Positions 10,901 to 64,000 of a DNA stretch of 64,000 nt are shown one piece after another (the stretch's first letter is position 1; every line of letters starts with the position of its first letter). The notes under the pieces are model-generated. The model was not told the origin of the DNA, ran no database searches, and saw only the letters and a list, made by a program, of their open reading frames with translations. The position numbers and the translations under genes are program-made. The stretch covers positions 19,637,700 through 19,701,699 of the forward strand of contig OZ037768.1 of NCBI GenBank assembly GCA_964035545.1. The letters run 5' to 3'. Source of the stretch: Bugula neritina. Lineage: Eukaryota > Animalia > Bryozoa.

Positions 10901-13900
10901 TGTTTCCCAAATGCTCTGTGGACCAAATATCTTCATAAAGTTGTTAATTATAGTTTCTATTAGCAGCTCCATGTTTAGCAGTAATTGCAAGAGTATTGAA
11001 GGTAGCCGCTGGTAAATCTGCTGTAATTTAGAAAGTGATTAGGCAGTCATCTGTATACTGACTATACACTATAATATGTTGGCTACTTGTTGTACGTGTA
11101 GAATGAGTTGCCAAATACATAGACACATGCAGTGAATAGTCAAGTGACAAAATACACCATTACATTAGGCTCATAGAATTTGTTCTCATGAAATGAACTG
11201 CCAAAATATAGAAAGTCTTGATAAATGGAGCTGATCTAATTATGTTGATGCAGTAAATCAGTAAAGCTATAAACTGTATTAATACAGTCTAGCTGTCTTT
11301 AAAATCATACAGGACTGGCTATGGCTATCTTCTTTTACAATCTTTAATATTTTTATTATTAATGTTGAAAAATATCTAGCAAATAATGAACCATACACCC
11401 ATTATTGCTAAAATTTAATTTTCAGGTTAATAGAAATTTCTTGAAAAAGTCATAAATGCTAATTGACAATTTAAAGCGATTGACGTTTCATATATATATA
11501 TATAAACCGTTAATGTTATATCAATGATATAAATGTAACATGCTAGGTAACATTAAGCGCATGCAATGTCACACCCCATCATGTGGCCTGATTTGCTACT
11601 ACTATTAAAAAGATGCAGTCATATGTATCTGTGCAGATATGTTGTAGTGTTGCTTTACTATTCCATTACATTTATTATATAATGAATATGCATTGTTTTA
11701 TAGTTCACCGTTTAAGTTCCACGAGTACTCCAACTCTACAGCTAGTAAACGAGCGAATCGAACTCGGTTTACTGACTACCAGATAAAGACTTTACAGGAC
11801 TACTTTGAGCAAAATGCATACCCTAAAGATGAAGAATTGGAACAGCTGTCAAGAGCCCTGCAACTTCCCAACAGAGTTATTGTTGTCTGGTTCCAGAATG
11901 CCAGACAGAAAGCTAGAAAGGTGATTAATTCCAAATATCTATTTCCTATTGGTGTTTTGACCTATTAGTAAAAGAGTTGTTATTTTTAAATGAGTGAATT
12001 CATCCCTCAGACAAATTCAAGATAAATTTTATTGTTTATTTATTTCTTGTGAACTTTTACATGAACACTGGAACTTATGTGATATAAAAGATTCACAGGA
12101 AACTGTTAATGATGTGAGATAAACACAAGAATCATATTCTGCTCTCAGGTGTATGAGAACTCGCCCTCGACAGCATCCACTGAAGTAACAGCAGTGAGTC
12201 AAACAGCCAAAAGCACATACCCATGCAAAAAGTGCGGCGTAGTGTTTAATGGCTACTATGAGCTCGTGAAGCACCAGAAGAGAGTTTGCATGAAGAATAA
12301 TGTAGTTCCGTTGCCCTTTGGCAACCAGGTGAGGAAAAATGTCATAATGATATGCGTGTATAGCATAAGATAACACATGTTGGGCGTGTGCCTTCGTAGC
12401 CTCTATTAGTTAACCACAAGTGAAACCGAAAGCTAAGCAAATGTTTTGGTCTTCTCCTTATTCATTATTATCAAAATAAATGTGTGTTTAATAGTTGCAG
12501 GCTGTCAGAATATGTTCATGATGAAGCAGCTAAAAAGCCACATAAAATTCCTACATAGCAATGTATCTTCCTTACTTTGACCTATTTATAAGTTTTGTTA
12601 AATCTAAAAAACACCCCAAGTTGCACACTGTCATCAAATTGAAATATGAAAGTCAAAGGAAATAAACACCAAACTTACGTTCACTACAGGCCGTCTTTTT
12701 GTGTGGTTGTCCTATCTTATACATATTTATTAGCTCATCGTGGTAACAAAACATATTTTTACCAGCATTAGTTGTTTTTTGTGGTTGTTAAAAGAGACTT
12801 CCATCTACTATGGCATTGTAATCAATTTCACAAAATGCATGTGAAATGTTTTTTTAATTTTATCGGTTTTAAATAATTTCATTAAGGCAGTTTTTTAAAT
12901 ATAGCAGGTAATAAAGTAGGCGGAAAATGCAAAACTATTTCTTTGATAGAGATGTTGCTAAAATTTTAAGTACATTTCACTTAACTTTGTAATTTATGTA
13001 TTTTTAGGACACTTCCCCTCACTCTGCATCTATTAATAGAGAGAAATCCACGAGCCAGAGTGAGGCGTGTGACACTATCTCGGATATTACCAGTAGACAG
13101 ACTAATGCCACTACTTCTCCAACACCGGGTCAGTATTACCCTCGCACACCTCACAGAGGCCCGCATTCCATAGACAGTAGTTTTTCTGATACTCCGTCTA
13201 ATCAATCTGACCAATTACCTTTACTATTGCTACACTACATTCTTAAACACAACTCTTCCTCCCCAAATGCCAAGATCTCTTCTAAAACTCTAGCTATGTT
13301 CAAGGAAAACATTCCTACTGATATGTTAGATATTGAAACCTATCAGCCACATTCCAGTTCAGGTTCAGTAATTGACTCGGATGCAACTGGTGACGTTTTC
13401 GGAGATGAATGTGTATCTACCGGAGATGAAACCGCTTGTAAAAAGACATTTTTGTCTGAGTGTTTTAGCTTATCGGACCAAATAAGAAGCAATGAATTAG
13501 TACGAGATTGGATAGAATGTTATCACAGCTCCGATACAAACAACAACTACGACGGTAGTGACTGGTGTTTTCATTGGTGTGCCGTGTTTTCTTGTAATCA
13601 TTTTCAGTTGTTTCGTTGGTGTTGTAAGCATGGTTTTCATCTAGAGCTTGAATGACTAAGTTTTTGGTATTGTTGTGAACCTGTTTAAGCATTTGCGTGG
13701 CTTTGTTTATTCACTCCAAGTCTTGCAGCGTTTGGTGTGCCGAGCTCTCACTTTATATTGTAGATGTGTTGTTGCACTTGCTTTTGTTAACACAAGTAGT
13801 TGTTTGCACCAACTGTTATTTTACATTTTGATTTCAGTGAAATACAGAACTTTTTTTCTCTTGAGTTGCTACCACTACACAATTCCAGTGTTTTTTTTTC

Positions 13901-16900
13901 ATCACAATTTACATACAAATGAAAATCATTTCAGGTAGAATACCCATGCTTGTTATCTCATAAATATAAAAACAATAAATTTACTTTTTTCTCCATCTAT
14001 AGGTTTGTTTTCCCAAATGAGTTCCAACTCATTAGCTTCTAAGACTGTCTCAGAAAGTATGGCCGCAACAGCAGCAGCTATGGATATGGCCAACTTGATG
14101 TCCTCTTACAACAGCGCTGCTAGTATGAGTCCTTTATTTCCTCCACTGCTGCCAATGCCTGGTTTACTTGGCAATGGTCAGCCTATGCCTCATGTTCAGA
14201 ACTTGATGAAAGATTTTTATGAACAATCTCTCAAAAAGTATATGGGTATGTAAGCTTTCCTGCAATTACACGCCAACCTTTTTTAGTTTTTTATTTTGTC
14301 ATATTCTTAGTATCTTGTCTGGTCCATATTTTTAATTTTTTTTGTTTTGTAGAAGAGAGCCAAAAACTGAGTGTCGCTCAGCCACCACAAAAGAATGACT
14401 CTGCTGCCTCAACCACTGGCAGCATTGGGTCAACATCTCGGAAAAGGTCGATAACAGTTGACAGCAACGCTGCTCCTACTGTCACTCCTACTCTCACTTC
14501 TCCAACACAGCAGGTAATGCACTCTACAAGTCAGAAATTTCAAGCCAAACTCTCAGCTACTTCTAGTATAGGTGAAGAAGATGCGAGTGCCTGTGACTCA
14601 GACACTGCAGACGACCATGAGTCAGTGATGGGTGACTCAAAAGATAAATCTTGTGGTAGCAGTCAAGGGAGTAACGGCAGAACCATTCAGAACAAGCGAT
14701 ACCGGACCAACCTCACCAATATGCAGATACACATCATGAAGTACATTTTCAAGGAGTACAAGACGCCAACTATGGCAGAATGTGATATTCTCGGCAACTT
14801 CATAGGACTGCAGAAGCGCGTCATTCAAGTTTGGTTTCAGAACGCCAGAGCTAAGGAAAAAAAGAGCAAGCTGATAAGCAACTGCAGCAGCGAGGAGCCA
14901 TTGGTGACGGAATGTGCTCGGTGTGGAGTTGTCTATTCTGCCCAATGCTCCATACAAGAGCACATTTTCTCCCAGCAACATATAAACGAGATACGGAATA
15001 CATTCTCAGGAAAGCTGACAGACTGCGACAAGGACGCATTGAGAAGGCAAGCTGAGGTGAGAAGTTGTGCCCCCAACGCTGCTTGCTTGACCTACATTCT
15101 CGCTGCTGCCTGTGCAATGACTCATAGGCTATGGCTGTCATTAGCTGCTAAACTCTGATGATTGGCTTGCATCACTTGCACTGCTTTTTATTACACCTGG
15201 CTACCGCAAAGAAATAGCACAATGTAGTTTATATAGTTGATTATTTTACTCTCTGCTATTGAAAGTTTGAGACTAGTTTTATATATTCCAAATAATTCAA
15301 ATGAAAATAATCAATTATAGAAATCTATTCTTTTAGTGATTTCAGGTCACATTGCAATATTACCTGTAGTTTGCTTTTTAGCTTATATCTTGCAGCTTAT
15401 TTGCTTTCCCTGTTTATTTATGCTCTACTAATGCGCAATTTTATTTTATATATCACTCTTAAATATATTTTGATTCTGCTTCATTAGATTTTATTGCTGA
15501 TTCATTTTTCTGGTTGTTGAAACCAAAAAGTGCATTTTAGTGTTTCTAACATTTTTAAATACAGAATTACAGAAATTGTGGTAACTTTTTAATGTAAATG
15601 ATTATTTTAGTAAAAAGTATTGAAGTTTCGTTTTATTACATTAATGACACTTTAACTATGTTTATATTTAGACACATAGAGTGCCTCATACCTCCAGAAG
15701 AGTTTCCAGCTCTTTTTCCAAGAAGTCAGAGAATATCCCCAAATTGGGGCTCTTTCCTAACGACTCTACCACTCCCACCGCTATTGGTTAGTATCTTTCT
15801 GAAGTGCAATATTCTAGTTTGTAAACTATTATTATTAATTTCTATAAGATTTTCTCTTTAATATTTTAAGACAATACCTGGTATATAACTACACTTTTAT
15901 CAAGCGTTCTTTAAGTTGTTCATGCATGCATATGCAGCTGGCAATTGTTGACTGCAGAAACCATAACTTCAACAGCTTATCCATTTCTTTATTTCTTAAA
16001 TTGTTTCCATGTCTGTAGATTTAGTTTGCTGATAGAATAAAAAACTTTTTTTAAAACTTCCATAATTGCAAACAACTTGGGAAATTGTCCCAAAGAGCCT
16101 CAATAACATATAGAGACCAGTTGGTGTGTTTTGATTCATTCAACCAAGTTGAGTTGCTAAATGAAACTGACATAACACATGCCTATATTTCATATCATTT
16201 CTTATTGCAGGTAAAGCAAACGATTACCACAATCAGGTCTCCAGAAACCTGCTGTCATCTTTCAACCCTATGAGTGGCATGCTAGGACTACCAGGTGCAG
16301 CAGATATGATGTCACTCATGTGTCCCAGTATGTTGCAACAGATGCCATCTTTCCTTCCCTCATTGCTGCCTGGTTAGTATGACATAGTGCTGTCTTTCTT
16401 GTTGCCTTCAAATCACGATAAATATGCACTACAACTCTTGCTATCTATCCTGCTATTCAATATATACTTAAATATTTTTTTCTAATAGCGGTAACGACTC
16501 AATTTCTGAATACTAAATTCCTTTCCTCAAGGTTTGTAGTGTAACACATGACAACCTACAAAATATTCTAAATTCTCTATACAATTACTCTTCATTATTA
16601 TGTAGGAGGAGCAGATCAGTCATTAGGATTATCTTCTCTCTACAATATGGAGTTTGGCACTCCCCTCAGTGTGTTACAGATACCCCAGGCGTCAATTCAA
16701 TCTATCAGCAGTAAACTAGCTGACACTGACTGCACTGTAGCTGACTATTCCCAAGACTGCTCTACTCTGGAGGATTTGTACAAGTGCATTCCAAGCGAAG
16801 ACATTTGTATCGTCAAACCTACATACGAAGATGTGGGGTGAGAAATATGTCTCTATTGTCTATATGCAGTGACTAGTTGTAGCACGCATATCTTCACTGT

Positions 16901-20121: not shown

Positions 20122-31461
<11,340 letters not shown>

Positions 31462-32101: not shown

Positions 32102-35100
32102 CTAAGCTCTAAAGTTGAAGGATCTGAAATAATAAAACTTGCCTTTAATTTCTAAAAAACACATATTTGTACAGAGTTGAATGTAATTGCCATGATTTTG
32201 TCAATTATAAATTAAAAGCCTATACAATTTTTTGGCAACAATAATTGTTGATTAGCTCATTTAGCTGTAGTCGTGAAGAAATCTTAATAGCACAAGTTTT
32301 TTATTTTCTTAATAAATTTTGGTTTGGGGCGTGGGTTGAAATTCTTGTGAGAACATTATACTTTGTTTGCTATATTTTTCATTTAGACCACAGGCGTTTC
32401 TCAATTTCTACCTTAGACGGTTGCTGTTATTGCAACTACCGATATTACTCAATTGTTTCCAACTGTTTAAATGCATGAATTAGGTTTGAAAGGCAGGTAT
32501 ATAATAGCAATAGAATATCCCACTGTCGTGACAACACTGTCTGCATCTAAATACAATATAGGATCACACAAAGCACACTCACCCAAGGAAATCAGGGCAC
32601 TTGGACAGCATCAACTCAAACTCTACTTCACTCAACTTTTTATCTTCATCCAAATCCGATTCTTCTATAATATTAGTTAATAGATACACAAATGAGGCAA
32701 AGTGTATGCTATACAGTATTACACTATAGAGTATGTAGTGCTATAATATAACTGTTTGTACTAATTATCCCTATATTCGCATTGTAAATTTTATAAGCAC
32801 TATTTTAGAGGGCGTTGATCTATAATAACCAACCTGGCAGCTAAATATGTGATAAATATTCAAATAGCAGTGAAATTAGATTTTAAACTTTTAAACTGTT
32901 ATTTCTGTTTATAGACTAGATATTCTAGATTATTTTGCCAATTGAAAATTGCAGATTATAGATTATTCCACTGAACCAGCTAAATTAACCCCACAATAAC
33001 TATTTACCAGTTCGCACATGACAACAACTTCATTGCCATAAACACTGTCAGTCGCTAGATATCACTTGCCTATGATCTTTGCTGTAATATAATCCAGTTC
33101 CTCTCTGTCCAGCTCGTAGTTGGTTATGTAATTCAGAGCAGTATCCATATCCGAAGAGTTCAAATACCCATCACCATCAGAATCTAATGTATGAAGTTGC
33201 ACAGCAATTACATTGATTTAACTTTAAAAATCTAGCATATGAAGATCAATGAATGTTTTCATGTTTTTTGACCCAAGACTTATAGGGCAAATAAGAAGAG
33301 ATTAAGTTGGCATAAGTTGAAACACATTCAAGACAACTTCAATGCATGTGTGTATATAGTGTGTATTACTGTATATAGTGTGTATTACTATATAGTGTGT
33401 ATTACTATACAGTGTGTATTACTATATATAGTGTGTATTACTATGTAGTGTGTGCTACTGTATATAGTGTGTATTACTGTGTACAGTGTGTATTACTGTA
33501 TAGTGTGTATTACTATAATATATAGTGTGTATTACTGTATAGTGTGTATTACTATGTAGTGTGTATTACTATATATAGTGTGTATTACTATGCATGTAGT
33601 GTGTATTACTATGTATTGTGTATTACTATATAGTGTGTATTACTATATAGTGTGTGCTACTATATAGTGTGCAATACTATGTAGTGTGTATTACTGTATA
33701 TAGTGTGTATTACTATGTAGTGTGTATTACTATGTAGTGTGTATTACTATGTAGTGTGTATTACTATGTAGTGTGTATTACTATATACTATATAGTGTGT
33801 ATTACTATGTAGTGTGTATTACTATGTAGTGTGTATTACTATGTAGTGTGTATTACTATGTAGTGTGTATTACTATGTAGTGTGTATTACTATATACTAT
33901 ATAGTGTGTATTACTATGTAGTGTGTATTACTATGTACTGTGTATTACTATATAGTGTGTATTACTATGTAGTGTGTATTACTGTATATAGTGTGTATTA
34001 CTATGTAGTGTGTATTACTGTGTACAGTGTGTATTACTGTATAGTGTGTATTACTATGTAGTGTGTATTACTATGTAGTGTGTATTACTATGTAGTGTGT
34101 ATTACTATATACTATATAGTGTGTATTACTATGTAGTGTGTATTACTATGTAGTGTGTATTACTATGTAGTGTGTATTACTATGTAGTGTGTATTACTAT
34201 GTACTGTGTATTACTATATAGTGTGTATTACTATGTAGTGTGTATTACTGTATATAGTGTGTATTACTATGTAGTGTGTATTACTGTGTACAGTGTGTAT
34301 TACTGTATAGTGTGTATTACTATGTAGTGTGTATTACTATGTAGTGTGTATTACTATATAGTGTGTATTACTGTATAGTGTGTATTACTATGTAGTGTGT
34401 ATTACTATGTAGTGTGTATTACTATGTAGTGTGTATTACTGTATAGTGTGTATTACTATGTAGTGTGTGCTACTATATAGTGTGCAATACTATGTAGTGT
34501 GTATTACTGTGTACAGTGTGTATTACTGTATAGTGTGTATTACTATAATATATAGTGTGTATTACTGTATATAGTGTGTATTACTATGTAGTGTGTATTA
34601 CTATATAATGTGTATTACTATACAGTGTGTGTTCATTCACCCAAAGTGAAGTGAAGACTTCCAGTTGCCTACCGTGTATCTTGAAGCAATAGTATGACTT
34701 GAGCTCCCGGGGGGACAACTCACACATTACTGATAACATGTTGATGAAGTCATTGAAGCACATATTCCCACTGGCATCTTCTGTGAAGACCTTCAGAATT
34801 TGATCTTGAAAAGGATTCTCCTACCAAACAAACAAAATGTTGAAACAAACTGATGATTACAAACATAGGAAGGAGTTGAGGAGATTTGGTTACTTACAAT
34901 TTAGCTTTGGGTGCTGATAATAGGTTAATATGGGCTGGTGGGCTCCTGAACCTATCCATCAATACAGCAGTATATGAGATTTAAAGCTAGGTTTATACAT
35001 GGTAAGTTTTGCAAGTGTATAAATTATGCAGTCCAGTCTGCGTTACAAACTGCTTGTTAAGTTTTTAAGTTTAAAAGACAAATATATTACATCATACGAT

Positions 35101-37044: not shown

Positions 37045-39020
<1,976 letters not shown>

Positions 39021-49000: not shown

Positions 49001-52000
49001 GAAAAATCAGTCTGTAGGCTCTAGTATGTATATTGAGACAGCTGCATAGCATTCCTTTCAGCTGCTGTGACATCAAATACAAAGCATTTACTTTTTATGT
49101 AATGATCTCTAAATGTTCCTTCCTTTGTTAAACACACGACTTGCCTCATGTTCTAACAACTCCTATCCATGGATAGACTGTGTACCATAAACTCGGATTT
49201 AAAAAGTATGTTATAACGATTTCAGCAAAACAAGGTAAGCTAGATAGTGCAATAAGCAGCTTTGAGAGAGCTCTGACCTATGCAAATCTGCAAGAGGACA
49301 AAGAAGCAGAAAGTGCCATTCTGACAGCCATAGATGACTTAAAAGATAGAATAGATAAAGGGGAAAATGGCACAGGTGAGCGGAAGGAGTACTAATTTGA
49401 AAAAATGGCTATATTCACTGTTATAAATTGCAAACAGTAGCAAATACATCACTGCAGAAGCTGTAATAGTATAATAAGATAGAAGCTAAAAGTGTTATTT
49501 AAGATAAAATGCTATGTGGTTTCTTTCCTTGTCTAATATTGCCGTAATCAAACATTTGTAAAAACACTTAGGACACGACAACTTTTAATAGACTATACTG
49601 TTTTAGCGGAAGGGGAAAATGGAGAAGATGAAAATACCTATGAGGAAGAGTTTCAAGATGCTGACGACGAAGGGGAACTGTCACCAGTAGGTGAAGAAGG
49701 TGAAGAAGATGCAGGTATGCTAAGGTTCTTGTGGTGAACTTTCGATTTAAAATGATGTTTATAGTATAAATAGTATAGAATTGCATTAAGCTATTATATT
49801 CTATTATTATTTTTTTTACAATGCAGTTACAATCACCATAGATATAGATTTGCATGGCTGGGTAAGTTGTCTCTTTAAGGATGTAAATGACAAGGGTTCA
49901 GGTGACAGGCTAATAAAGTCAGGTGTCCACATGTTGCCTATGTGTCAGATGTCTACAGGTTACCTATGTGTCAAGTGTTACAAGTTACCTAGGTGTCAAG
50001 TGTCACAGGTCACCTAGGTGTCAGGTGTTTACAGCTTACCTAGGTGTCAGGTGTTTACAGCTTACTTAGGTGTCAGACTACCATGAAACAACTTTACCTA
50101 TTTCTAATAGAAGTTACTTAACGTATTAGGCTATTCATTAAGGAACAGTAAAGGCTATACTTAGTGATAATACAACCATTAACATATAGTGTTAAAACTT
50201 AGCTTACTATTTCGTATGCTTAATTTAGAAGTGGTTGATGAATTAACTGACTAACTCCAGACTTGGTGAGCAGCTACTATAAGTTGAGCTTGAATTGCCT
50301 GCACTGCAAGTTTATTTACCAGCTCCTAGCCTGTAACGCAAATAGTTTCATTTCACTATCTGATAATTTCTCACACTGTTTTGTTCAAAAGTTTTACCCT
50401 CTAATACACAACGTGTTTAAATTTAGAGCCCAGAATATATATCAACACTCAGCTGGTTTCATACAACAAAATGTTAGGTCTAAGCTCTTGTATCAGAACT
50501 TAGAGTAATTTAAATTGTCTTTCAAATACAAATATGTATTTACTTGTATAAATGTATAAATGCTTAAAACAGTTTGATTTTCTGAAAAAGCAAAATAGTA
50601 TTTCTTTGCAACATCATACTGATCAGGTAAAACAATACATAGATATTATGTTTTAGTGTAGGTATACCTAAATATTGAAAAACTTAGTATTACTGACAAG
50701 ACATCACCTAATTGTAAAGGAGTGTAAGATACCAAGTCAAAACTTTTTTGAATTAAAGTATATAGTCTTGTATTAAAAATTGTTTTGTTTATAAAATTTG
50801 TATGTTCATAGTTTGAATAGAAATCTTTGACATACCTCTTTCATTGATGGGCTTTATGCATGCCTTTGCCTAGCTTAAATTACTAGTTTTCCACCTCAAT
50901 TTTTACTAGGCCAAAATTATAGTCAGTTTTATGAGGTCACCTGCAACTCTGGAGTATACATTTTCTGCAAGGATGTCATAGCAATATTTGCATTTATACA
51001 GATAGATTATGAAGCCCATCAATTGTAACTTTAGGCAACCAATTTTAATTTTTCTATAATTTTATACACTGTAGATAATCCATCAAAACACCTTTCCAGT
51101 CCAACCCTCAGGCCTCAATTAAATACAAATGCTCCTTTGACAACTATCCGAGAAAACTTCTTATATGCCAAAAAACTAACAAGTAAAAGATTTTCTGTAT
51201 GCAGTTTGTCTAGTGAAGATCTTGTATGCAATGATATAAACGACTCCCCAGTTGTTTCTGCATGCAACACGCCACGTAAAAACAAGTCAAAAAATGTAAT
51301 AAAAACTTCAGCAAACAGAGTAAGACTAGTAAAGCAGGACTCTTCTACAAAGGGTAAACGAGTCCAGCTAGTTTTGCCACCATTAAGTTTTTCCCGGAAA
51401 GAAGAGAACAATGCTAACAAACAGTATAAAAGCTGTATCCCAGTGAGAAATTGGCAGCCGATCAAGTCTAATACTCCTATAGATAAGAGATTTTATTCCC
51501 AAGCTAAGAAAGAGAATTTCCAAGCAGCATCTAGGCATCTCAATGACCAGAAACAATATTCAGCACACAGCAATTCTTGCAAATTACCAAAACTTATCAT
51601 GGGGGCCAATTCAGCTCAGAAAATTCCCATGAAAAAGCAGCCAACTCCAAAAAGCTTCACATCGATATACCACACTTCTATCACCAAGGCTAAGTTTGAA
51701 CATATAAAATCTAGATACATGGATATAAAAAGACCATTGAGGAAATCTAATGAGCAAGTAAACCCTAGTAAGGAAAAAAGTGCCACTTTGAAAAGCCAAA
51801 AGCCAAGGAATAAGATAACTCCCCAGTCTATGGCTGTGCATCACAAAGGTAAACAGCCAATAAAACAAAGCAGTTTCCCGAAACCTATTCGTGTGCCAAG
51901 TGCTCATGATGATGAATCTGCAAGCAGTACGAGCACTTTGTCTTCGAAGGTAGATGAAAGAGATTGTCGATTGTCAATTGAGGTTAAGACACCCGACGAG

Positions 52001-53553
52001 AATTTTCCAGACACAGAATCTCCTATTGTAAGCAGCACTCCAGTAGTCCAGACTGCTGAAAAATCAATAGGTAGTGGTGAACAGCAAGAATCTAATGCTA
52101 ATGACATGAAGACTGACTCAAAAGAGGACTTGTTGATCACAGAGCAAGATAAACTAACTCCAGCTGAAAACAACCAAAACTTTTGTGTTGATGGCACCGT
52201 GGTTACAAGTTCTGCAGACATTTGCAGCAATGTTTCAGTGGTTGAACCATCAGCTGGAGTAGGAGAATCGATGGACAATGTAAGGTTGCATACTGATACT
52301 TATAGCAAAATAGAACAGTTAGAAATTGCCAATGATCCATCCTCAGATATTTTGACACCAAAAGAAAAAAAGGATTGTAATAAAGATTCTAGACAGGAAT
52401 TAAAATCCAACAACCCAGAAGATTCTGTTACGTTTGCGGAGTTTCTAACCCAATATGGCGATATGACAAGTGCACAAGAAAACAATTCTGAAAATTTGTT
52501 ATCTAATCGTAAAATTAAAGAGAAATCAGATTCTGTTAATTCAGAAACAGAATTTACAGATGTAAAAACGGACATAGAATTGGCAGAAAACCTCTGCAAC
52601 AAGCTGAATGTTGCTGAGAATGCAAGTGGCAAAGAAAAATATGTCAGGCTACCCACTCCAGTAACATCTGTGTCAGAAAAGGAGATACATTCCACAAAGA
52701 CAAAGGTCAACAGCAAAGAATTCCCTACAACTCACCAAGTTTTACCCTCAAATGCTAAACAGAATCTAAATTCCAAAGTTGGCAGGCAGATAGGCCCTGC
52801 TGATCAATGTGTCTCTGAGGGTACAGATGAGTTGGTAAACGACATGCCAAGTTCTTGCTTAGAAACTGGTGCAGAGAATAATTCTGATATTTCCAAGACA
52901 GAAACCCACACTAAGACATCAGATGTAGTGATTGATGGGGCGCACATTGACAATTGAAGGTTTCTTGCATGTCTGTTAAAAGTTGTGTTGAAGTTACTCC
53001 CCCTTGTATACCATTAAGTTCGTTGGAATGGAATACTTATTACCATAGAGAATTATGATTTAAACTGAACAATGATTGCCAGGACAGAAAATTAACAACA
53101 TAAAACAAAGTAGAATATTGTTTATAAGTTTACTAGGTTTCATTAGTCAGCACTAATGTTATAGTCATCAGTTACTGAGCACTATATTTTGATTTCATTA
53201 CCTATGTAAAATTGTCAATGTAAGTCTGAAGTTTGTATACATTGTATTGTAAATTTGATTATCAAGCATGATTATTATGTTTCTGTTTAGTAGAAAATTT
53301 AGTCTGTAACGTTGCTAGAAGCCATAATTCTGGCGTCACCTAAAGTTTGTAGCCTTATATATGTGTGTATGTATAGGATATTATATGTATATATTACGTC
53401 TATATTTCTTATTTGCATCTGTACATGTGCACACACACATCCATTAAATAAAGATGGTTGACCCACCAAATCTACACTAGCAAATTATACTTATTTTTTG
53501 TTACAGGTAAAAGAATAAAAAAAGATAAACGGCATAGAAAAGAAGACAAGTAA
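43002..53553 (+). CDS. TTC25: Outer dynein arm docking complex subunit 4 (tetratricopeptide repeat protein 25)
   Basis: Exons 43002-43118, 43768-43899, 44229-44382, 44672-44739, 45490-45658, optional 45875-46060, 46423-46638, 47261-47468, 48276-48362, 48654-48856, 49226-49375, 49607-49714, then 53507-53553 or 51075-52957. Motifs CLVARSRCYLQMG, GEFEMALVFYHRGNKLRPE..FRLGIQKCQEAINNSVG, LLGSLYADREYLEKLL, YLDTRTDFWRQQKPMYAR, WLCHELGRCY. Confidence 0.92.
49900..50077. repeat. About 25-26-bp degenerate tandem repeat
   Basis: TCAGGTGTTTACAGCTTACCTAGGTG-like units in a TTC25 intron. Confidence 0.8.
51075..52957 (+). CDS. Long low-complexity coding exon, probable alternative terminal exon of TTC25
   Basis: 1.88-kb stop-free frame in AT-rich DNA; acceptor CACTGTAG at 51074, phase 1, in frame with TTC25 exon 49607-49714; basic N-half, acidic/Ser-rich C-half. 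Confidence 0.65.
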
Positions 53554-58085: not shown

Positions 58086-58192
58086 TTAGTCATGAGGTAG
58101 TGGAAAATCACCAAGTAAAGGGATGATCTGATCTCTCAACTTATCAGTAGAACACACGAGTAACTTTCTGCTCAACAGATTCATTGGCTGAC
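58086..58192 (-). CDS. Terminal exon of a second, tandem inositol monophosphatase paralog
   Basis: Acceptor GTTTTAG, same phase as IMPA exon 7; GQPMNLLSRKLLVCSTDKLRDQIIPLLGDFPLPHD* versus [36 protein letters not shown] (19/35 identical); minus-strand AATAAA at 57997-58002. Confidence 0.85.
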
Positions 58193-58231
58193 CTAAAACA
58201 GCGGCAGTAACCTGCAAAGTGATGTAAGTAG

Positions 58232-58675
58232 TATATGTGGAGCATTTGGGACCCCATCCCTGTGTTATATTCCCCATTACTCACACCGAGAAATCATTTT
58301 ACTCACGGCTGGGGTAATTAATTATACATTAATTTTTTTATTTTTTTACTCATGCAAAATTATATGTAGAAAACTTGGGACCCCATCCCTGTGTTATATT
58401 CCCCATTACTCACACCGAGAAATAATTTTACTCACGGCTGGGGTAAATAATTATACATTAATTTTTTCTTTGTTTTTTTTACTCATGCAAAATTATATGT
58501 AGAAAACTTGGGACCCCATCCCTGTGTTATATTCCCCATTACTCACACCGAGAATTCATTTTACTCACGGCTGGGGTAATTAATTATACATTAATTTTTT
58601 CTTTGTGTTTTTACTCATGCAAAATTATATGTGGAGCATTTGGGACCCCATTTTTGTGTTATATCCCAATTACTC
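58232..58675. repeat. About 130-bp tandem repeat (3 copies plus a partial), probable part of the terminal inverted repeat
   Basis: GGGACCCC anchors at 58248, 58377, 58510, 58642 (periods 129, 133, 132). Confidence 0.95.
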
Positions 58676-58710
58676 TAAAACAGATGAACAGTTACTTTAC
58701 TCTGTGTTAA

Positions 58711-58718
58711 TATAAAAG
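58711..58718 (+). promoter_or_regulatory. TATA box (TATAAAAG) upstream of the first element ORF
   Basis: Canonical octamer between the terminal repeats and ATG 58822; AT-rich context lowers specificity. Confidence 0.5.
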
Positions 58719-58821
58719 TGAATATGAACTAAATAAAAGTTGTGATATTTGAAATTATTTTTATTATTGTGGTAGATGTGAAAACAAGCACATATACTCA
58801 AGTCCATACCGTGCTAGCAAA

Positions 58822-59292
58822 ATGACTAGATTTGTTCATTCATCTATAGTTCATGATTTTGTATGGTCTACGTTGTCAGAGAATTGCTTGTGCTGCTCTC
58901 CTTTTTTTGTGGAAACAAAGCATGTGAAGCATTTTAAGAAAAAATATAAAATGTTAACCATAAACGAAGTTAAATTGTGTAAAAATCTTGGAAACATTTT
59001 GATATCATGTCCAAATTTTCCTCAAAACATCAACACATTTATTAAATATATGCTCAGCATTTCAAATGTTTCAAGAGAAGACAAGTATTTTAAAATAATG
59101 TGCATCATTGTTCAGTTATCAGATTCATTGCTTGTTCAGCATGATATAAAGAAAATTGAAACTTTGATTGAGATATGTCAGCAACATATTGATAGTTCAT
59201 GTAAGAGCAAGTATTTGTTTATTTTACATTTGCTTGGAATATTAATGATGATAATATGTTTGTACATTACGTATAAACAGATATCTCATTAG
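58822..59292 (+). CDS. Element ORF1, 156 aa, C-terminal transmembrane anchor; possible Bcl-2-like fold
   Basis: AAAATG start context; hydrophobic tail YLFILHLLGILMMIICLYITY followed by KQISH; BH4-like IVHDFVWSTLS. Confidence 0.6.
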   Translation: MTRFVHSSIVHDFVWSTLSENCLCCSPFFVETKHVKHFKKKYKMLTINEVKLCKNLGNILISCPNFPQNINTFIKYMLSISNVSREDKYFKIMCIIVQLSDSLLVQHDIKKIETLIEICQQHIDSSCKSKYLFILHLLGILMMIICLYITYKQISH

Positions 59293-60068
59293 GTAAGCTA
59301 TATGTAAAAGCTTTATTCACATTATTTTTTTGACAAACAATGATCATATACATTCGAAATATTATATTATACTAAATGCATTGAATAATATTCAAAGTAT
59401 GGTGATATATAATTGGATTGCAAAGTGAAAGTATTCGTTGGTATAAGATAGGTTTTGTAATTTTGTAATAAATATTTTGAACATTTGTTTGTAAAGAAGT
59501 ATTCAACTAGACATATAGTGCAAATAATTGGAGTCTTGTGAAAGTGTTGTTATTAATTATTATTATTATTATTGGTTGTATCACAGCTTTTTAGCTGGTG
59601 TAACCTTTTATAACCACAACCTAGTTTCACTAGGTCGATGGTATGATTATTATTATTATTATTATGATTGTTATTGTTTGAAGTTACATAATGCATATTA
59701 TAATAATATTATGCATGCATTGTGAAAACTTTCTTTTGCAGAACCCTATAGTAGCTTGTCCATGCATGGATGTGTTTGAATAATTTGAGTATTTACATGC
59801 TTTTATATATTTCTTCTAAGATGATTAATTAAAATGAAGACAGGAAATATTTCAAGTGTTAACTTTGCCTTCCACAAAATTCCTTCATTATAGACAATCA
59901 TGAGCTTTTTATAACCAATGAAACCAAAGCTTTTTCAACCATGAATTCAAGAGTTAACTACATTATTTTGCTAAATCATTCAAGCTTATTAGTTCATTTG
60001 TCATTCTTGTTTTGCAGAAAAGGAGTTTTGTGACAGTTGTTGTAATTATTGGATACCACAGTTTACTA

Positions 60069-60506
60069 ATGGACAAATTATTACAGAATGATATTCCATC
60101 GTCAACATTTCATAAAGCAATTTACAATAAAGTGCTACTTTACCAGATATGCAATCAAATATGGATTGAAACCAAAAAGCTTGCTTATCATTCATGTGAA
60201 GCTTGTCTTAACCCAAACAGAATATTTGCTCATACATGCTTACACATATGGAATGAAACTCAGCTTTTAGACAATGGTTGGGCAAAAAACTTTACTGAAA
60301 AGTATTTCAAGGATGCATTAAATAATGTTTCTTGGAAGAAAATACAATTGTATATGGAAAGGTATAATCATTTAAATAGAGACAATAGGAAATGTAACAA
60401 AATGTTTTGGATAACAAGAAGTCGAAGATTGTTTCTACAAAAAACACTATTATCCTCTCTTAATAATATTGTCAAGGAAGAAGAACAATTTTATATACAA
60501 GTATAA
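60069..60506 (+). CDS. Element ORF2, 145 aa, CxxC-x8-HxC putative zinc-binding protein
   Basis: ATG 60069 after a strong acceptor (TTCTTGTTTTGCAG, 60017); motif CEACLNPNRIFAHTC. Confidence 0.6.
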   Translation: MDKLLQNDIPSSTFHKAIYNKVLLYQICNQIWIETKKLAYHSCEACLNPNRIFAHTCLHIWNETQLLDNGWAKNFTEKYFKDALNNVSWKKIQLYMERYNHLNRDNRKCNKMFWITRSRRLFLQKTLLSSLNNIVKEEEQFYIQV

Positions 60507-60716
60507 TAATTTGTTTAAAGGCAATGCATACATTTAAAAATTATTATTTACTTTTATACTCTAGTATTTACGTTTCTCATTCTATCACTGTGAATAACAT
60601 AATAAAATAGAATGTTGATGTGAGTTGACAAAGTATGTTTTATAATTTCATCTTCAATTTTCATAAAAATTAAAGGTTTTGATTTTTTGGATTCATTTGA
60701 ATATAGCATACCAACC

Positions 60717-60926
60717 ATGCAACATCTCAGCTTGATGGAACAAATTTTCCGTCATCAAAAATCATTGCTAGCTATAATTTTTTGCTTAGCGACAGCTCTA
60801 ATTACTCTAACTGTTTATAACTCAGTTTCTGAAGAAAGTAAAGCAGTTGAATCAATTAAAAATTTACAAAAAATATTATTCTCAACCGATAATAGTACAT
60901 TACTTGAAAGAAATTCTACAATATAA
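60717..60926 (+). CDS. Element ORF3, 69 aa single-pass membrane protein
   Basis: CAACCATG start context; TM segment LLAIIFCLATALITLTVY; stop 4 nt before the ATPase ATG. Confidence 0.6.
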   Translation: MQHLSLMEQIFRHQKSLLAIIFCLATALITLTVYNSVSEESKAVESIKNLQKILFSTDNSTLLERNSTI

Positions 60927-60930
60927 ATAA

Positions 60931-62056
60931 ATGGAGAATAAAGAAATAGACATTTCCCTTCATTCGCCATTCACAGGAATTATTAACGGTAAACATTAAT
61001 TACTAAACCAACTCACTTCCTAGCAATTTCCCCATTATTTTTTGTCAAGTCATGGATGGAATAAATTGATTAGATTGATTTAATTACAAATGCTTCCTAT
61101 ATAATTGGTTTAAGCGGATTAAAACCGTCTTAAGAAAATTAAATCTAAAATGATGAAGTATAAATGTTGCTAATGTATTATAAAATTGTGGTATTACAAA
61201 AATTAAAATAGATTCACAGGAGATTGATAAACTAAAAGTGTAAATGGAATTAGCTTTTACTAGGATTATTTTTTGATTGCGTGTCAATAAAGCGGAAAAG
61301 AAAAATAAAGCGGACACAAATAATGATTTATCGCAGTCAAGTCTTATACAGAATGTAGTTAAGCTTTATTTTGCAATTACCTAAAGTTTGTATAAACAAT
61401 TTTTAGCTCAACTATTTTATTCAACTGCAGTAAAGTGAAATGAAACCAAGTTGGAAAACATAATTGTTGATACAGGTCCTACTGGATCCGGAAAAAGTGT
61501 TCTGATGAAAAAGATTTTGGAAAACAGCAACAGTCTTATATTCCCAAATGTTGAAGAATGCATTATTAATTACAGTGTTTGGCAGACATTGTACGAACAA
61601 ATTCAAGTTCCATTTCCAATTAAATTTTTAGAAGGAATTACAAATGTTGAAGATATTCCAAGAGACAATAAGCATAGGCTAATTATTATTGACGATTTGA
61701 TGAATACTTTATCTGAGTCACAAGAAGTGTGTGACCTGTATACAAAATATTCTCACCATTTGAATATTAGTGTAATTATATTAGTTCAAAATCTGTTTGA
61801 AAAAGGCAAGTATTTTCGAACAATAAGTTTAAACACTCATTATTTATGGTTGCTAAAGTCTGTTAGAGATACATCAATTATATCTACATTAGGAAGACAA
61901 ATGATGAACTCAAAGTTTTTATCTAAATGCTACAAAGATGCAGTTAGCAAAAAATTTGGTCACCTATTTATTGACATGAAAGCCTCATCAGATGATAAAT
62001 ATAGAGTAAGATCCAATACATTTGATGAAGAAGTTGTGGTATATGTTGATCAGTAG
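60931..62056 (+). CDS. Polinton/Maverick-type DNA packaging ATPase (FtsK/A32-like), two exons, 212 aa
   Basis: Exons 60931-60988 and 61476-62056 give MENKEIDISLHSPFTGIINGPTGSGKS (Walker A), LIIIDD (Walker B), YSHHLNISVIILVQ, RTISLNTHYLWLLKSVRD, FGHLFID, RVRSN, the motif series of Polinton/adintovirus ATPases. Confidence 0.9.
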
Positions 62057-62772
62057 CTCAATAGATCATGACTTTTATTATTATAATTCTGTTTTTATCA
62101 ATATTGCCATTTATTCTGCAAAGTTTTGCAATATTTTTTAAATAATGTAATGCAAAAATTTTTAAAATTTCCAATTTTGTTAAAAGAATGAAAAAAACTT
62201 ATGTTGCAAATGTATTTTAGGATTGATTTCAAATATGTATTGTGAGTAGAGTTTAGAAAGCTAATCAAAAATTTTTAGTTATCTTAAGATATGGAAGTAA
62301 AGGGTGCATCATAATAATATACTGAAAAATAAATTTTTTTATTCAATTTGAAGTGAGTCTCTTGAAGGATAACTTAAGTTTAAAGTAACAGTCATGGGTT
62401 AAATTTTCTTAGAAAAATTGTTCAACCTCTTAAGTTACTCATTGGCTAGCTGAAAACCAAAAAGCAATCGGATTGAATAGTTATTTTTAGTAGGAGGAGA
62501 ATGAGTTAAGCATGATTAATTGAAATTTTTTGTATAAAATATCTATCTTTTCGATGTTTCACCATTATCAGTTTGTGATATCAATTAAAAATCTGCCTCA
62601 AGTCAAAAGAAAATAAAATGTAAGTAATATTTCATATATAAATAATAAACAAAATTTTATGTGAAAATTAAATGAAATTATTAAAAAAAAATTTTCTTTG
62701 TACGTAGCATCAAAAAATTATAAAGTTTGTGTTTAGATTTTAAATTAATGATTTTTAGAATATATAAAAAAT

Positions 62773-62907
62773 ATGAGTGTTTTGGATGATGGACTGGTTA
62801 AGTGTGGATATTGTGGAAATATTTGGGATGGCTGTGCACAGTGTGACTGCTATAACATTTTTCCAGAGATATATAATCATGTTGAAGAATCGAATCAAGT
62901 ATGTTGA
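62773..62907 (+). CDS. Element small ORF or exon, 44 aa, CxxC-x9-CxC zinc-ribbon-like motif (not in the ORF track)
   Basis: MSVLDDGLVKCGYCGNIWDGCAQCDCYNIFPEIYNHVEESNQVC*; acceptor at 62758; internal phase-0 donor GTATGT at 62899. Confidence 0.55.
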   Translation: MSVLDDGLVKCGYCGNIWDGCAQCDCYNIFPEIYNHVEESNQVC

Positions 62908-63271
62908 CAAATATTATGTTTCTAGGTGCACCTAAATATTTAGTGAAACTTGATTATGTTATTTTGGAGTTACCCTTTCATGAATGTGTTAGTACTTGTT
63001 TTGTGGATATGCGGAGCTTGTCCACAAAACATAATGAATTATTCAAGCAGTAATGCAGTCATGAAGGGGCAACTCTAAAATACAATAGCATCACAATATT
63101 ATTAGCTATATATAAATATATATATTTTTTTGATTTTATAATTTTTTACTTCTTGAAATATTTTAGAAAAGTTTTTTTCTGTAAGTTTATTTTGTGTTTG
63201 ATAATTTCAAACCACTTTAACTTAATTATGTTTGTGCAAATATGCTTTTAATAAGTAATGTTTTTTTGTAG

Positions 63272-63424
63272 ATGCCTCCAAAATCTCAACTTAAAAAACT
63301 TGTGAAAACCTTTATCAATGATGAAGCAATTGAGGTGAATGATGGAGAATATGAGGAAGAAATGTCATCTCAACTTGCACCAAAAAAATGTAAAGGAAAA
63401 GGAAAAGGCAGACCAACTACAAAG
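63272..63424 (+). CDS. Element ORF or exon, acidic patch plus basic NLS-like tail; probably continues beyond the window
   Basis: Acceptor TTTTTTTGTAG directly before ATG; MPPKSQLKKLVKTFINDEAIEVNDGEYEEE..PKKCKGKGKGRPTTK; donor AAG/GTGGGT at 63425. Confidence 0.55.
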
Positions 63425-63436
63425 GTGGGTGTTAAC

Positions 63437-63959
63437 CAGGGTTGGGGTAATTGTAATTTGTAATTGTAATTGGTTGTAATTATTTACATTTTTTCAAGTA
63501 ATTGAATGTAATTTGTAATTGATGTATAAAAATGTAATTGTAATTAATTACATATTTAATGTAATTGATTTTTACAATTACTTTATAATTACATGTCAAT
63601 TACTTCAAACTTTGAAATCCTAAAAGTTTCATACTTTTCCTACCATGCCTACTGTTAAATAACAAATTCAGATTAATTGTCAATGTGGTATAGTATTACT
63701 GTTGAGTACAAAGGAGGTTCAGCACTGTCAAAATTACCCCTGCTAGTTGGACCCTAGAAGTGAAATTGCATAACTTCTATTTATCTCTTGCTAGAACAAA
63801 AGTAATTGTAATTGTGATTAATTACATTGCCATGTAATTGTAATTGTAATTAATTACATTACTATTTGACTGTAATTATAATTGTAATTGTAATTGACAA
63901 ATTATCATGTAATTGTAATTGTAATTAATTACATTCACATGTAATTGACCCCAACCCTG
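63437..63959. mobile_element. hAT-type MITE (523 bp) nested in the Maverick
   Basis: 12-bp perfect TIR CAGGGTTGGGGT/ACCCCAACCCTG; perfect 8-bp TSD GTGTTAAC (63429-63436 and 63960-63967); dense subterminal TGTAAT/ATTACA repeats. Confidence 0.92.
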
Positions 63960-64000
63960 GTGTTAACTTTTAATTCAGAAATTAACTTTGATTTTAAATG

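What the first reader, a model, noticed from the sequence alone, without database searches (positions are those of the whole stretch)
58227..64000. Left arm of a Maverick/Polinton-like endogenous virus with a precise terminus, inserted in a host intron
Seen: host exon and intron sequence stops at GATGTA/AGTAGT, followed by 130-bp tandem repeats, a TATA box, closely spaced same-strand ORFs and an intact packaging ATPase. Known: Polintons begin with AG-type short-repeat termini such as AGTAGT, have long TIRs and 5-6 bp target duplications, and encode this ATPase. Inference: a fairly young, possibly intact 15-25 kb element whose accessory left-end gene set is not recognisable to me.
Basis: partly seen in the sequence, partly recalled or inferred. 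Interest (0 to 1): 0.85.

Follow-up and report, generated by a model that had tools for sequence, protein, structure and literature searches.

The report
Left end of Maverick-like provirus
This stretch looks like the left end of a virus-like mobile element of the Maverick/Polinton kind sitting in an animal-type genome; that is an ordinary find, and its one unusual trait is an intron in its DNA-packaging gene.

Summary
At 58227 the sequence reads AGTAGT. A 133-bp tandem array follows (3.4 copies, 58232-58675), then a TATA-like motif. Three + strand open frames of 179-205 codons are far longer than chance, and G+C drops from 34% to 28%. One gene (60931-62056) encodes an A32/IVa2-type packaging ATPase. 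It has two exons, and the intron just before the P-loop is shared by its closest relatives.

The (AGT)2 end motif matches the published Maverick terminus. This supports the reading "left end of an integrated Maverick/Polinton-type element". That reading is not proven. The window holds no protein-primed polymerase, integrase, protease or capsid gene, no second end and no testable target duplication.

The other open frames are orphans; their only relatives are near-identical copies. "Young and intact" cannot be judged. "In a host intron" rests on one candidate terminal exon 15 nt away.

Verdict: probably a new member of a known kind, of modest interest.

The parts
58086..58211 (-). Candidate last exon of a host gene (41 codons plus stop). 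On the - strand it is preceded by a ...TTTGCAG acceptor. An AATAAA signal follows at 58002-57997.
   Evidence: Read from the sequence and the translation. No Pfam hit and no PDB hit. It is a weak model.
58221..58226 (+). GATGTA, the 6 bp next to the proposed terminus. It is a candidate target-site duplication; the second copy is not in the window.
   Evidence: Mavericks have TSDs of 6 bp (PMC8097293) or 5-8 bp (PMC10748475). Untested here.
58227..64000 (+). The visible part of the element, which runs off the end of the window.
   Evidence: G+C is 27.6% against 34.2% to the left; the long ORFs are on one strand; the ATPase family is viral.
58227..58232 (+). AGTAGT, an (AGT)2 end motif.
   Evidence: The motif is described in PMC8097293.
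58232..58675 (+). Subterminal tandem array: 133-bp unit, 3.4 copies.
58711..58718 (+). TATAAAAG, a TATA-like motif 104 nt before ORF1.
   Evidence: Read. No test of function.
58822..59292 (+). ORF1, 156 aa, an orphan. By eye it has a hydrophobic C-terminal stretch.
   Evidence: The only relative among 1.84 billion representatives is P0135, 88% identical over 121 aa. No Pfam, PHROGs, NCBIfam or PDB match.
60012..60506 (+). ORF2, 164 aa from a TTG (the first ATG is 19 codons in), an orphan rich in Cys and His.
   Evidence: The only relative is P0133, 154 of 158 identical. No family or PDB match.
60687..60926 (+). Small ORF (79 aa from TTG, 69 aa from the ATG at 60717) with one hydrophobic helix-like stretch. 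It ends 4 nt before the ATPase start codon.
   Evidence: No family match.
60931..62056 (+). Packaging ATPase gene. Exon 1 is 60931-60988, a GT..AG intron is 60989-61475, and exon 2 is 61476-62056. The Walker A motif starts at the exon junction; Walker B (IIIDD) lies in exon 2. No stops or frameshifts in either exon.
62773..64000 (+). Gene or genes of unknown function: a 44-aa Cys-rich ORF and a 63-aa acidic/basic ORF. They run towards the end of the window and contain one nested insertion of about 0.5 kb that looks like a MITE.
   Evidence: A weak MJ0042-type CxxC zinc-finger hit, E 0.0023, is below cut-off. I made no splice model.

Best explanation
58227-64000 is the left end of an integrated virus-like element of the Maverick/Polinton type, lodged in an animal-type genome next to the 3' splice site of a host gene's candidate last exon. 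Shown here: an (AGT)2 end, a subterminal 133-bp tandem array, a block of ORFs that all run inward, and a two-exon gene for an A32/IVa2-type genome-packaging ATPase. Inferred from what is established for the family: the terminal repeat region is one arm of a long terminal inverted repeat that serves protein-primed replication and integrase-mediated insertion. The genes are read by the host's RNA polymerase II and spliced in the nucleus. The ATPase pumps the linear genome into a jelly-roll capsid. The orphan ORFs between the terminus and the ATPase are lineage-specific accessory genes, which are usual near the ends of such elements.
For: The end motif and its placement are; the motif is known from PMC8097293. 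The tandem array is unique to this spot. The ATPase search returned 234 relatives at E<=0.001 among 313 candidates. Of 101 aligned family members, 84 hit Pox_A32 and 31 hit Adeno_IVa2. G14, K15, D82 and R139 are invariant across those 101. Some relatives sit on contigs of 1.4-6.1 Mb, which means they are integrated in large genomes. Other copies exist: the ATPase is 199 of 201 identical to P0121, ORF2 is 154 of 158 identical to P0133, and ORF1 is 107 of 121 identical to P0135. The exon-1 peptide carries the P-x-T motif 7 residues before the P-loop glycine, in the same register as 84 of 97 distant relatives.
Against: None of the two defining genes (pPolB, RVE integrase), the protease or the capsid genes is in the window; 16 ORFs were scanned. 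Vertebrate Mavericks place pPolB between the left end and the ATPase, and their intact copies are intronless (PMC8097293). Here there is no pPolB in that position and the ATPase has an intron. The window ORF's own Pox_A32 score (21.5 bits) is below Pfam's cut-off of 22.8. The second end and the target duplication are unseen. I did not examine the gene neighbourhoods of the relatives, and no structure model could be made.
Confidence: 0.62

Rival explanations
1. It is an integrated element of the wider polinton-like supergroup but not a Maverick/Polinton proper. It could be of the polinton-like-virus or Tlr type, with a different replication or integration module. Or it could be only a truncated left arm of a decayed element.
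For: Only the ATPase is recognisable, and that ATPase family is shared by polintons, polinton-like viruses, virophages and Tlr elements (PMC4028283, passages). The gene order differs from vertebrate Mavericks. One nested insertion shows that some time has passed since integration.
Against: The (AGT)2 end is a Maverick trait. The host looks like an animal, where Mavericks and adintoviruses are the reported kinds (PMC8502044, passages). The ATPase and the two large orphan ORFs are open, and other copies are 88-99% identical.
Confidence: 0.25
2. It is a host locus. An A32-like ATPase gene was captured long ago and is now an ordinary intron-bearing host gene. It lies next to an unrelated 133-bp minisatellite, and the AGTAGT is there by chance.
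For: The gene has a spliceosomal-type intron shared by relatives at 54-75% identity. The neighbouring ORFs have no viral signature.
Against: The G+C break falls exactly at the motif, and the motif's placement has about a 1% chance. Several slightly different copies of three different ORFs exist. Relatives are spread over hundreds of unrelated contigs. No spliced product of this gene is in its protein cluster.
Confidence: 0.08
3. The junction at 58227 is an assembly join between unrelated sequences.
For: There is an abrupt change of composition, and repeats at the junction can mislead assemblers.
Against: The junction carries the expected end motif and lies outside the repeat array. Nothing else suggests a join. 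I could not test this with reads.
Confidence: 0.03

Closest known systems
Maverick/Polinton elements (polintoviruses) of animals, as described for vertebrates in PMC8097293
   Same: The (AGT)2 5' end motif, a terminal repeat region, inward-pointing genes and an A32/FtsK-HerA-type packaging ATPase.
   Different: There is no pPolB between the end and the ATPase. The ATPase gene has an intron, whereas intact vertebrate copies are intronless. About 2.7 kb of orphan ORFs lies at the left end. The core genes, the TIR pair and the TSD are unseen.
Adintoviruses (animal-associated polinton-like viruses, PMC8502044)
   Same: An animal host setting, an IVa2/A32-like ATPase and terminal repeats that abut host DNA in some datasets.
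   Different: Adintoviruses are defined by PolB, integrase and capsid genes, none of which is visible here. I compared no adintovirus sequence, because fetching one is barred.
Poxvirus A32 and adenovirus IVa2 packaging ATPases (Pfam PF04665, PF02456)
   Same: The same ATPase family by profile: 84 of 101 and 31 of 101 family members match, with Walker A and Walker B present. From memory and from no call: the adenovirus IVa2 gene also has a short first exon and an intron.
   Different: The match is distant. The window ORF itself scores 21.5 bits for Pox_A32 (cut-off 22.8) and E 0.0037 for Adeno_IVa2. At about 210 aa it is shorter than those proteins' profiles (242 and 370 positions).
Polinton-like viruses and Tlr elements of protists
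   Same: The same ATPase family and integration into host genomes (PMC4028283; PMC12220804, listing only).
   Different: Their hosts are protists, whereas this host carries a multi-homeodomain animal-type gene. They usually lack pPolB, which cannot be told here.

Membership tests
Maverick/Polinton | [quoted passage not shown] | not testable with these tools
   None among 16 ORFs of 58227-64000 scanned against Pfam. The rest of the element lies beyond the window, and I did not extend it.
Maverick/Polinton | Retrovirus-like (RVE) integrase | not testable with these tools
   As above.
Maverick/Polinton | FtsK/HerA-type (A32-like) packaging ATPase | tested here: met
   The family matches Pox_A32 in 84 of 101 members. 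The window ORF alone is just under Pfam's cut-off.
Maverick/Polinton | [quoted passage not shown] | not testable with these tools
   None recognised in the window.
Maverick/Polinton | Terminal inverted repeats of 100-1500 bp | not testable with these tools
   Only one end is in the window, and the window holds no inverted copy.
Maverick/Polinton | Target-site duplication of 5-8 bp (6 bp in vertebrates) | not testable with these tools
   The candidate is GATGTA at 58221-58226; its partner is unseen.
Maverick/Polinton | End motif (AGT)2 or (AG)3 at the 5' end | tested here: met
   AGTAGT lies at 58227-58232, at the composition break and the start of the array. The motif is from PMC8097293.
Maverick/Polinton (intact vertebrate type) | Intronless genes; pPolB-ATPase module next to the left end | tested here: not met
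   The ATPase has one intron, and no pPolB lies between the end and the ATPase. This is a trait of the vertebrate clade and does not define the whole family.
Pfam PF04665 Pox_A32 | Score at or above the curated cut-off (22.8 bits) | tested here: not met
   The exon-2 ORF scores 21.5 bits, E 1.8e-4. I did not score the two exons as one protein. 84 of 101 relatives match at E<=0.001.
Polinton-like viruses / Tlr-type elements | Capsid and ATPase module with a replication gene other than pPolB; protist host | tested here: inconclusive
   The ATPase is shared by these groups. The host looks like an animal. The replication module is unseen.

The most novel reading that the evidence does not exclude
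This copy represents a lineage of animal Maverick-like viruses that differs from described ones in two ways. First, its packaging-ATPase gene keeps a spliceosomal intron right before the P-loop across relatives down to 54% identity, so expression depends on nuclear splicing, as in adenoviruses. Second, its left arm carries a lineage-specific set of orphan genes in place of the polymerase. This particular copy sits 15 nt from a host splice acceptor and may be a recent, gene-disturbing insertion.
Probability: 0.35. Interest if true: 0.5.

Novelty: new member of a known kind. Interest (0 to 1): 0.35.

Why it matters
Mavericks and Polintons are common in animal genomes, so one more copy is not news. 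Two points are worth keeping. First, a whole clade of ATPase genes is split by the same intron, whereas the intact vertebrate elements described so far are reported to be intronless. That bears on how these elements are expressed and on how gene finders that ignore introns miss or truncate their genes. Second, the left arm holds open frames with no relatives outside near-identical copies, which adds to the poorly known accessory gene pool of these elements. If the neighbouring host exon is real, the insertion also separates a splice acceptor from its usual branch-site region. That would make it a candidate for a polymorphic insertion that affects a host gene.

Tried and rejected
Several lines gave nothing.
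- Sequence search of the ATPase ORF against PDB chains found nothing. The profile search found only P-loop-limited matches, best KaiC at E 7.8e-6 over profile positions 12-54.
- PHROGs and NCBIfam gave nothing meaningful for six ORFs.
- PDB searches of ORF1 and ORF2 had best E-values of 0.19 and 0.032, which I treat as chance.
- Pfam found nothing for ten more ORFs on both strands.

Naming the host failed. The 606-aa host ORF has a single unnamed relative at 82% identity among 7496 candidates. Cluster look-ups gave no names. I therefore call the host only 'animal-type', on the strength of two homeodomain ORFs on one strand. I do not take the contig for human: a human protein would have come back with names.

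I considered the unspliced 201-aa ORF as the whole ATPase and rejected it. It starts at a TTG with no in-frame ATG before the P-loop, and it lacks the conserved P-x-T strand that exon 1 supplies.

I considered introner-type origin of the intron (PMC12166617, passages) and did not pursue it. I saw no terminal repeats at the intron ends by eye, and the intron is shared by diverged relatives.

On whether introns in Polinton genes are in print, the evidence is limited. Searches and term look-ups in PMC8097293, PMC8502044, PMC6431247, PMC11161782, PMC3671162 and PMC10748475 turned up only the statement that intact vertebrate copies have none. Kapitonov & Jurka 2006 and Koonin et al. 2024 are not held. 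Pritham et al. 2007 is recalled only. Supplements are closed and I did not ask for them; Additional file 1 of PMC4028283 ('split' genes) and the supplements of PMC8097293 may bear on this point. I therefore do not claim that it is unpublished.

PMC2836005 had nothing on Polinton termini.
Full report
WHAT IS THERE. The window is AT-rich eukaryotic DNA with 26-39% G+C per 2 kb. It has intron-split host genes. Two homeodomain ORFs lie on the + strand at 8345-8812 and 14517-15158 (Pfam Homeodomain, E 1.5e-13 and 2.4e-16). That pattern fits a multi-homeodomain animal gene. I do not take the contig for human. A 606-aa host ORF has one unnamed relative at 82% identity among 7496 candidates in 5.8 billion proteins. 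The host species could not be named.

THE JUNCTION. GATGTA lies at 58221-58226 and AGTAGT at 58227-58232. From 58232 to 58675 runs a tandem array with a 133-bp unit, 3.4 copies and 92% matches (alignment). The core of the unit occurs three times there and nowhere else in the window on either strand (0 expected).
- AGTAGT occurs 17 times and AGAGAG 26 times on the + strand of the window. Finding one of them within about 6 nt of the array start has a chance near 1% by my arithmetic.
- G+C falls from 34.2% left of 58227 to 27.6% right of it. That is lower than any of 105 equally sized host windows, whose minimum is 30.9%.
- Passages of Barreat & Katzourakis 2021 (PMC8097293) give (AGT)2//(ACT)2 and (AG)3//(CT)3 as the end motifs of vertebrate Mavericks, with 6-bp target duplications.
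- Jeong et al. 2023 (PMC10748475, passages) give 13-25 kb, TIRs of 100-1500 bp and TSDs of 5-8 bp for the family.
The visible end therefore fits the family. The exact boundary still rests on the motif and the composition break. It does not rest on a second copy or an empty site.

THE HOST SIDE. On the - strand, 58211-58086 reads as 41 codons and a stop. A ...TTTGCAG acceptor precedes it, and an AATAAA signal follows 87 nt after the stop. Neither Pfam nor PDB matches it, so 'host exon' is a fair but weak model. If it is right, the element begins 15 nt upstream of the acceptor. That is inside the stretch where a branch site normally lies, so the insertion may disturb splicing of that exon. This is inference.

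THE GENES. Three + strand open stretches of 205, 182 and 179 codons stand far above chance. In 2000 shuffles the longest averaged 74.8 codons with a maximum of 152, and the third longest never passed 95. The - strand maximum of 93 does not stand out.

The ATPase:
- The ORF at 61451-62056 carries GPTGSGKS and IIIDD.
- Alone it scores 21.5 bits on Pfam Pox_A32 (E 1.8e-4, cut-off 22.8) and E 0.0037 on Adeno_IVa2.
- It has 234 relatives at E<=0.001 among 313 candidates; the best 120 are listed.
- I aligned it with 100 of those 120. I dropped 14 near-identical or P-loop-less fragments of the close clade. I also dropped P0032, P0034, P0043, P0067, P0092 and P0113 as over-long, truncated or redundant.
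- Of the 101 aligned sequences, 84 match Pox_A32, 31 match Adeno_IVa2 and 6 match FtsK_SpoIIIE at E<=0.001.
- G14, K15, D82 and R139 are invariant.
- Solved structures match only around the P-loop.
That condition is not met.

THE INTRON. The ORF starts at a TTG, with no in-frame ATG before the P-loop. Upstream, 60931-60987 translates to MENKEIDISLHSPFTGIIN. It is followed by one more base and GTAAAC. The sequence ...ATACAG ends at 61475, and exon 2 begins there in the matching phase.
- Among the 97 listed relatives at 47% identity or less, 84 have P-x-[TSN] exactly 7 residues before the P-loop glycine in one continuous ORF. Of the other 13, 6 have no P-loop by my pattern, 5 have fewer than 7 residues upstream and 2 lack the motif.
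- Among the 23 relatives at 54% identity or more, none has it. Eight have unrelated residues upstream, 13 start after the P-loop and 2 have fewer than 7 residues upstream (raw list).
- The exon-1 peptide has the motif in that register. Given as a separate sequence, it aligns to the N-terminal strand of the distant relatives, and the exon-2 peptide starts at the P-loop.
The intron is thus one that relatives share. As the operators ask, I searched and aligned the exons apart and left the joined step out. Neither exon has a stop or frameshift, so this gene has 0 breaks. No spliced product is in the protein cluster of this ORF, which has 2 members, both unspliced reads of the locus. There is therefore no expression evidence.

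THE REST.
- ORF1 (58822-59292) has one relative among 1.84 billion representatives: P0135, 107 of 121 identical.
- ORF2 (60012-60506) has one relative: P0133, 154 of 158 identical.
- The ATPase ORF is 199 of 201 identical to P0121. P0001 and P0121 were each seen on 6 contigs.
Slightly different copies of three ORFs therefore exist elsewhere, which fits a multi-copy element or related populations.
- A 69-79-aa ORF with one hydrophobic stretch ends 4 nt before the ATPase start.
- Right of the ATPase lie a 44-aa Cys-rich ORF and a 63-aa ORF. That region also contains one nested MITE-like insertion of about 0.5 kb, with 14-nt perfect inverted ends and a 9-bp flanking direct repeat. This counts as one insertion. 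I cannot tell whether it interrupts coding sequence, and I do not give its place.
- None of the 16 ORFs scanned in the element part matches a polymerase, integrase, protease or capsid family.
- No envelope, fusion or coat gene was recognised. Because that role cannot be excluded for the orphans, I made no splice models for them.

WHAT IT MOST LIKELY IS. It is most likely the left end of an integrated Maverick/Polinton-type element (confidence 0.62).
- Shown here: the end motif, the array, the break in composition, the one-way gene block, a viral-type two-exon ATPase, and other copies.
- Inferred from the family's established biology (PMC4028283, PMC5718144, PMC8097293, PMC10748475, passages only): the repeat region is one arm of a TIR used in protein-primed replication and integration, and the ATPase packages the genome into a jelly-roll capsid. 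The intron implies nuclear splicing.

Evidence against or missing:
- The defining polymerase and integrase, the capsid module, the second end and the duplication are unseen.
- The gene order and the intron differ from the intact vertebrate elements, which have pPolB next to the ATPase and no introns.

Rivals:
- Another member of the polinton-like supergroup, or a truncated arm (0.25).
- A domesticated host gene beside a chance motif (0.08).
- An assembly join (0.03).

WHAT WAS LEFT OUT. The decisive check is reading on to the right and comparing other copies. Supplements of the papers were not opened. Those of PMC4028283 and PMC8097293 may list split or intron-bearing genes.

VERDICT. This is probably a new member of a known kind. 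The clade-wide ATPase intron and the orphan left-arm genes are its only unusual traits. Interest 0.35.

Noticed in passing
window 8345-15158, + strand: There are two homeodomain ORFs (8345-8812, 14517-15158). The second is followed by a C2H2-like motif, seen by eye. They look like exons of a multi-homeodomain zinc-finger (Zfh-type) animal gene.
   Followed up: partly
window 21947-22550: A long trinucleotide microsatellite of CTA and then CCA repeats gives poly-Leu/Pro/Gly/Ser pseudo-ORFs and a GC skew of -0.35.
   Followed up: no
window from 26936 (11-nt period), 33319-34560 (17-nt period), 37299-37850 (TA-rich): Three further large tandem arrays lie in the host part.
   Followed up: no
window 51137-52957, + strand: A 606-aa open frame has no Pfam domain and a single unnamed relative at 82% identity. 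It is a fast-evolving host exon from a species not represented by named proteins.
   Followed up: partly
inside the part 62773-64000 (place not given, by the operators' rule on breaks): There is one nested insertion of about 0.5 kb that looks like a MITE, with 14-nt perfect inverted ends, a 9-bp flanking direct repeat and many GTAATT-type internal repeats. No second copy of its end motif is in the window.
   Followed up: partly
window 58212-58226: Only 15 nt of host intron remain between the proposed element end and the acceptor of the candidate last exon. The usual branch-site region would therefore now lie inside the element (inference).
   Followed up: no
protein P0111: One ATPase relative at 35% identity is filed under a bacterial symbiont genome bin (Candidatus Thiodiazotropha taylori). 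For a eukaryotic virus-type gene this looks like host or element DNA binned by mistake.
   Followed up: no
window 60687-60930: A small membrane-type ORF stops 4 nt before the ATPase start codon. A TATAAATA motif lies in between, which is too close to act as that gene's TATA box. The two may share a transcript (inference).
   Followed up: no
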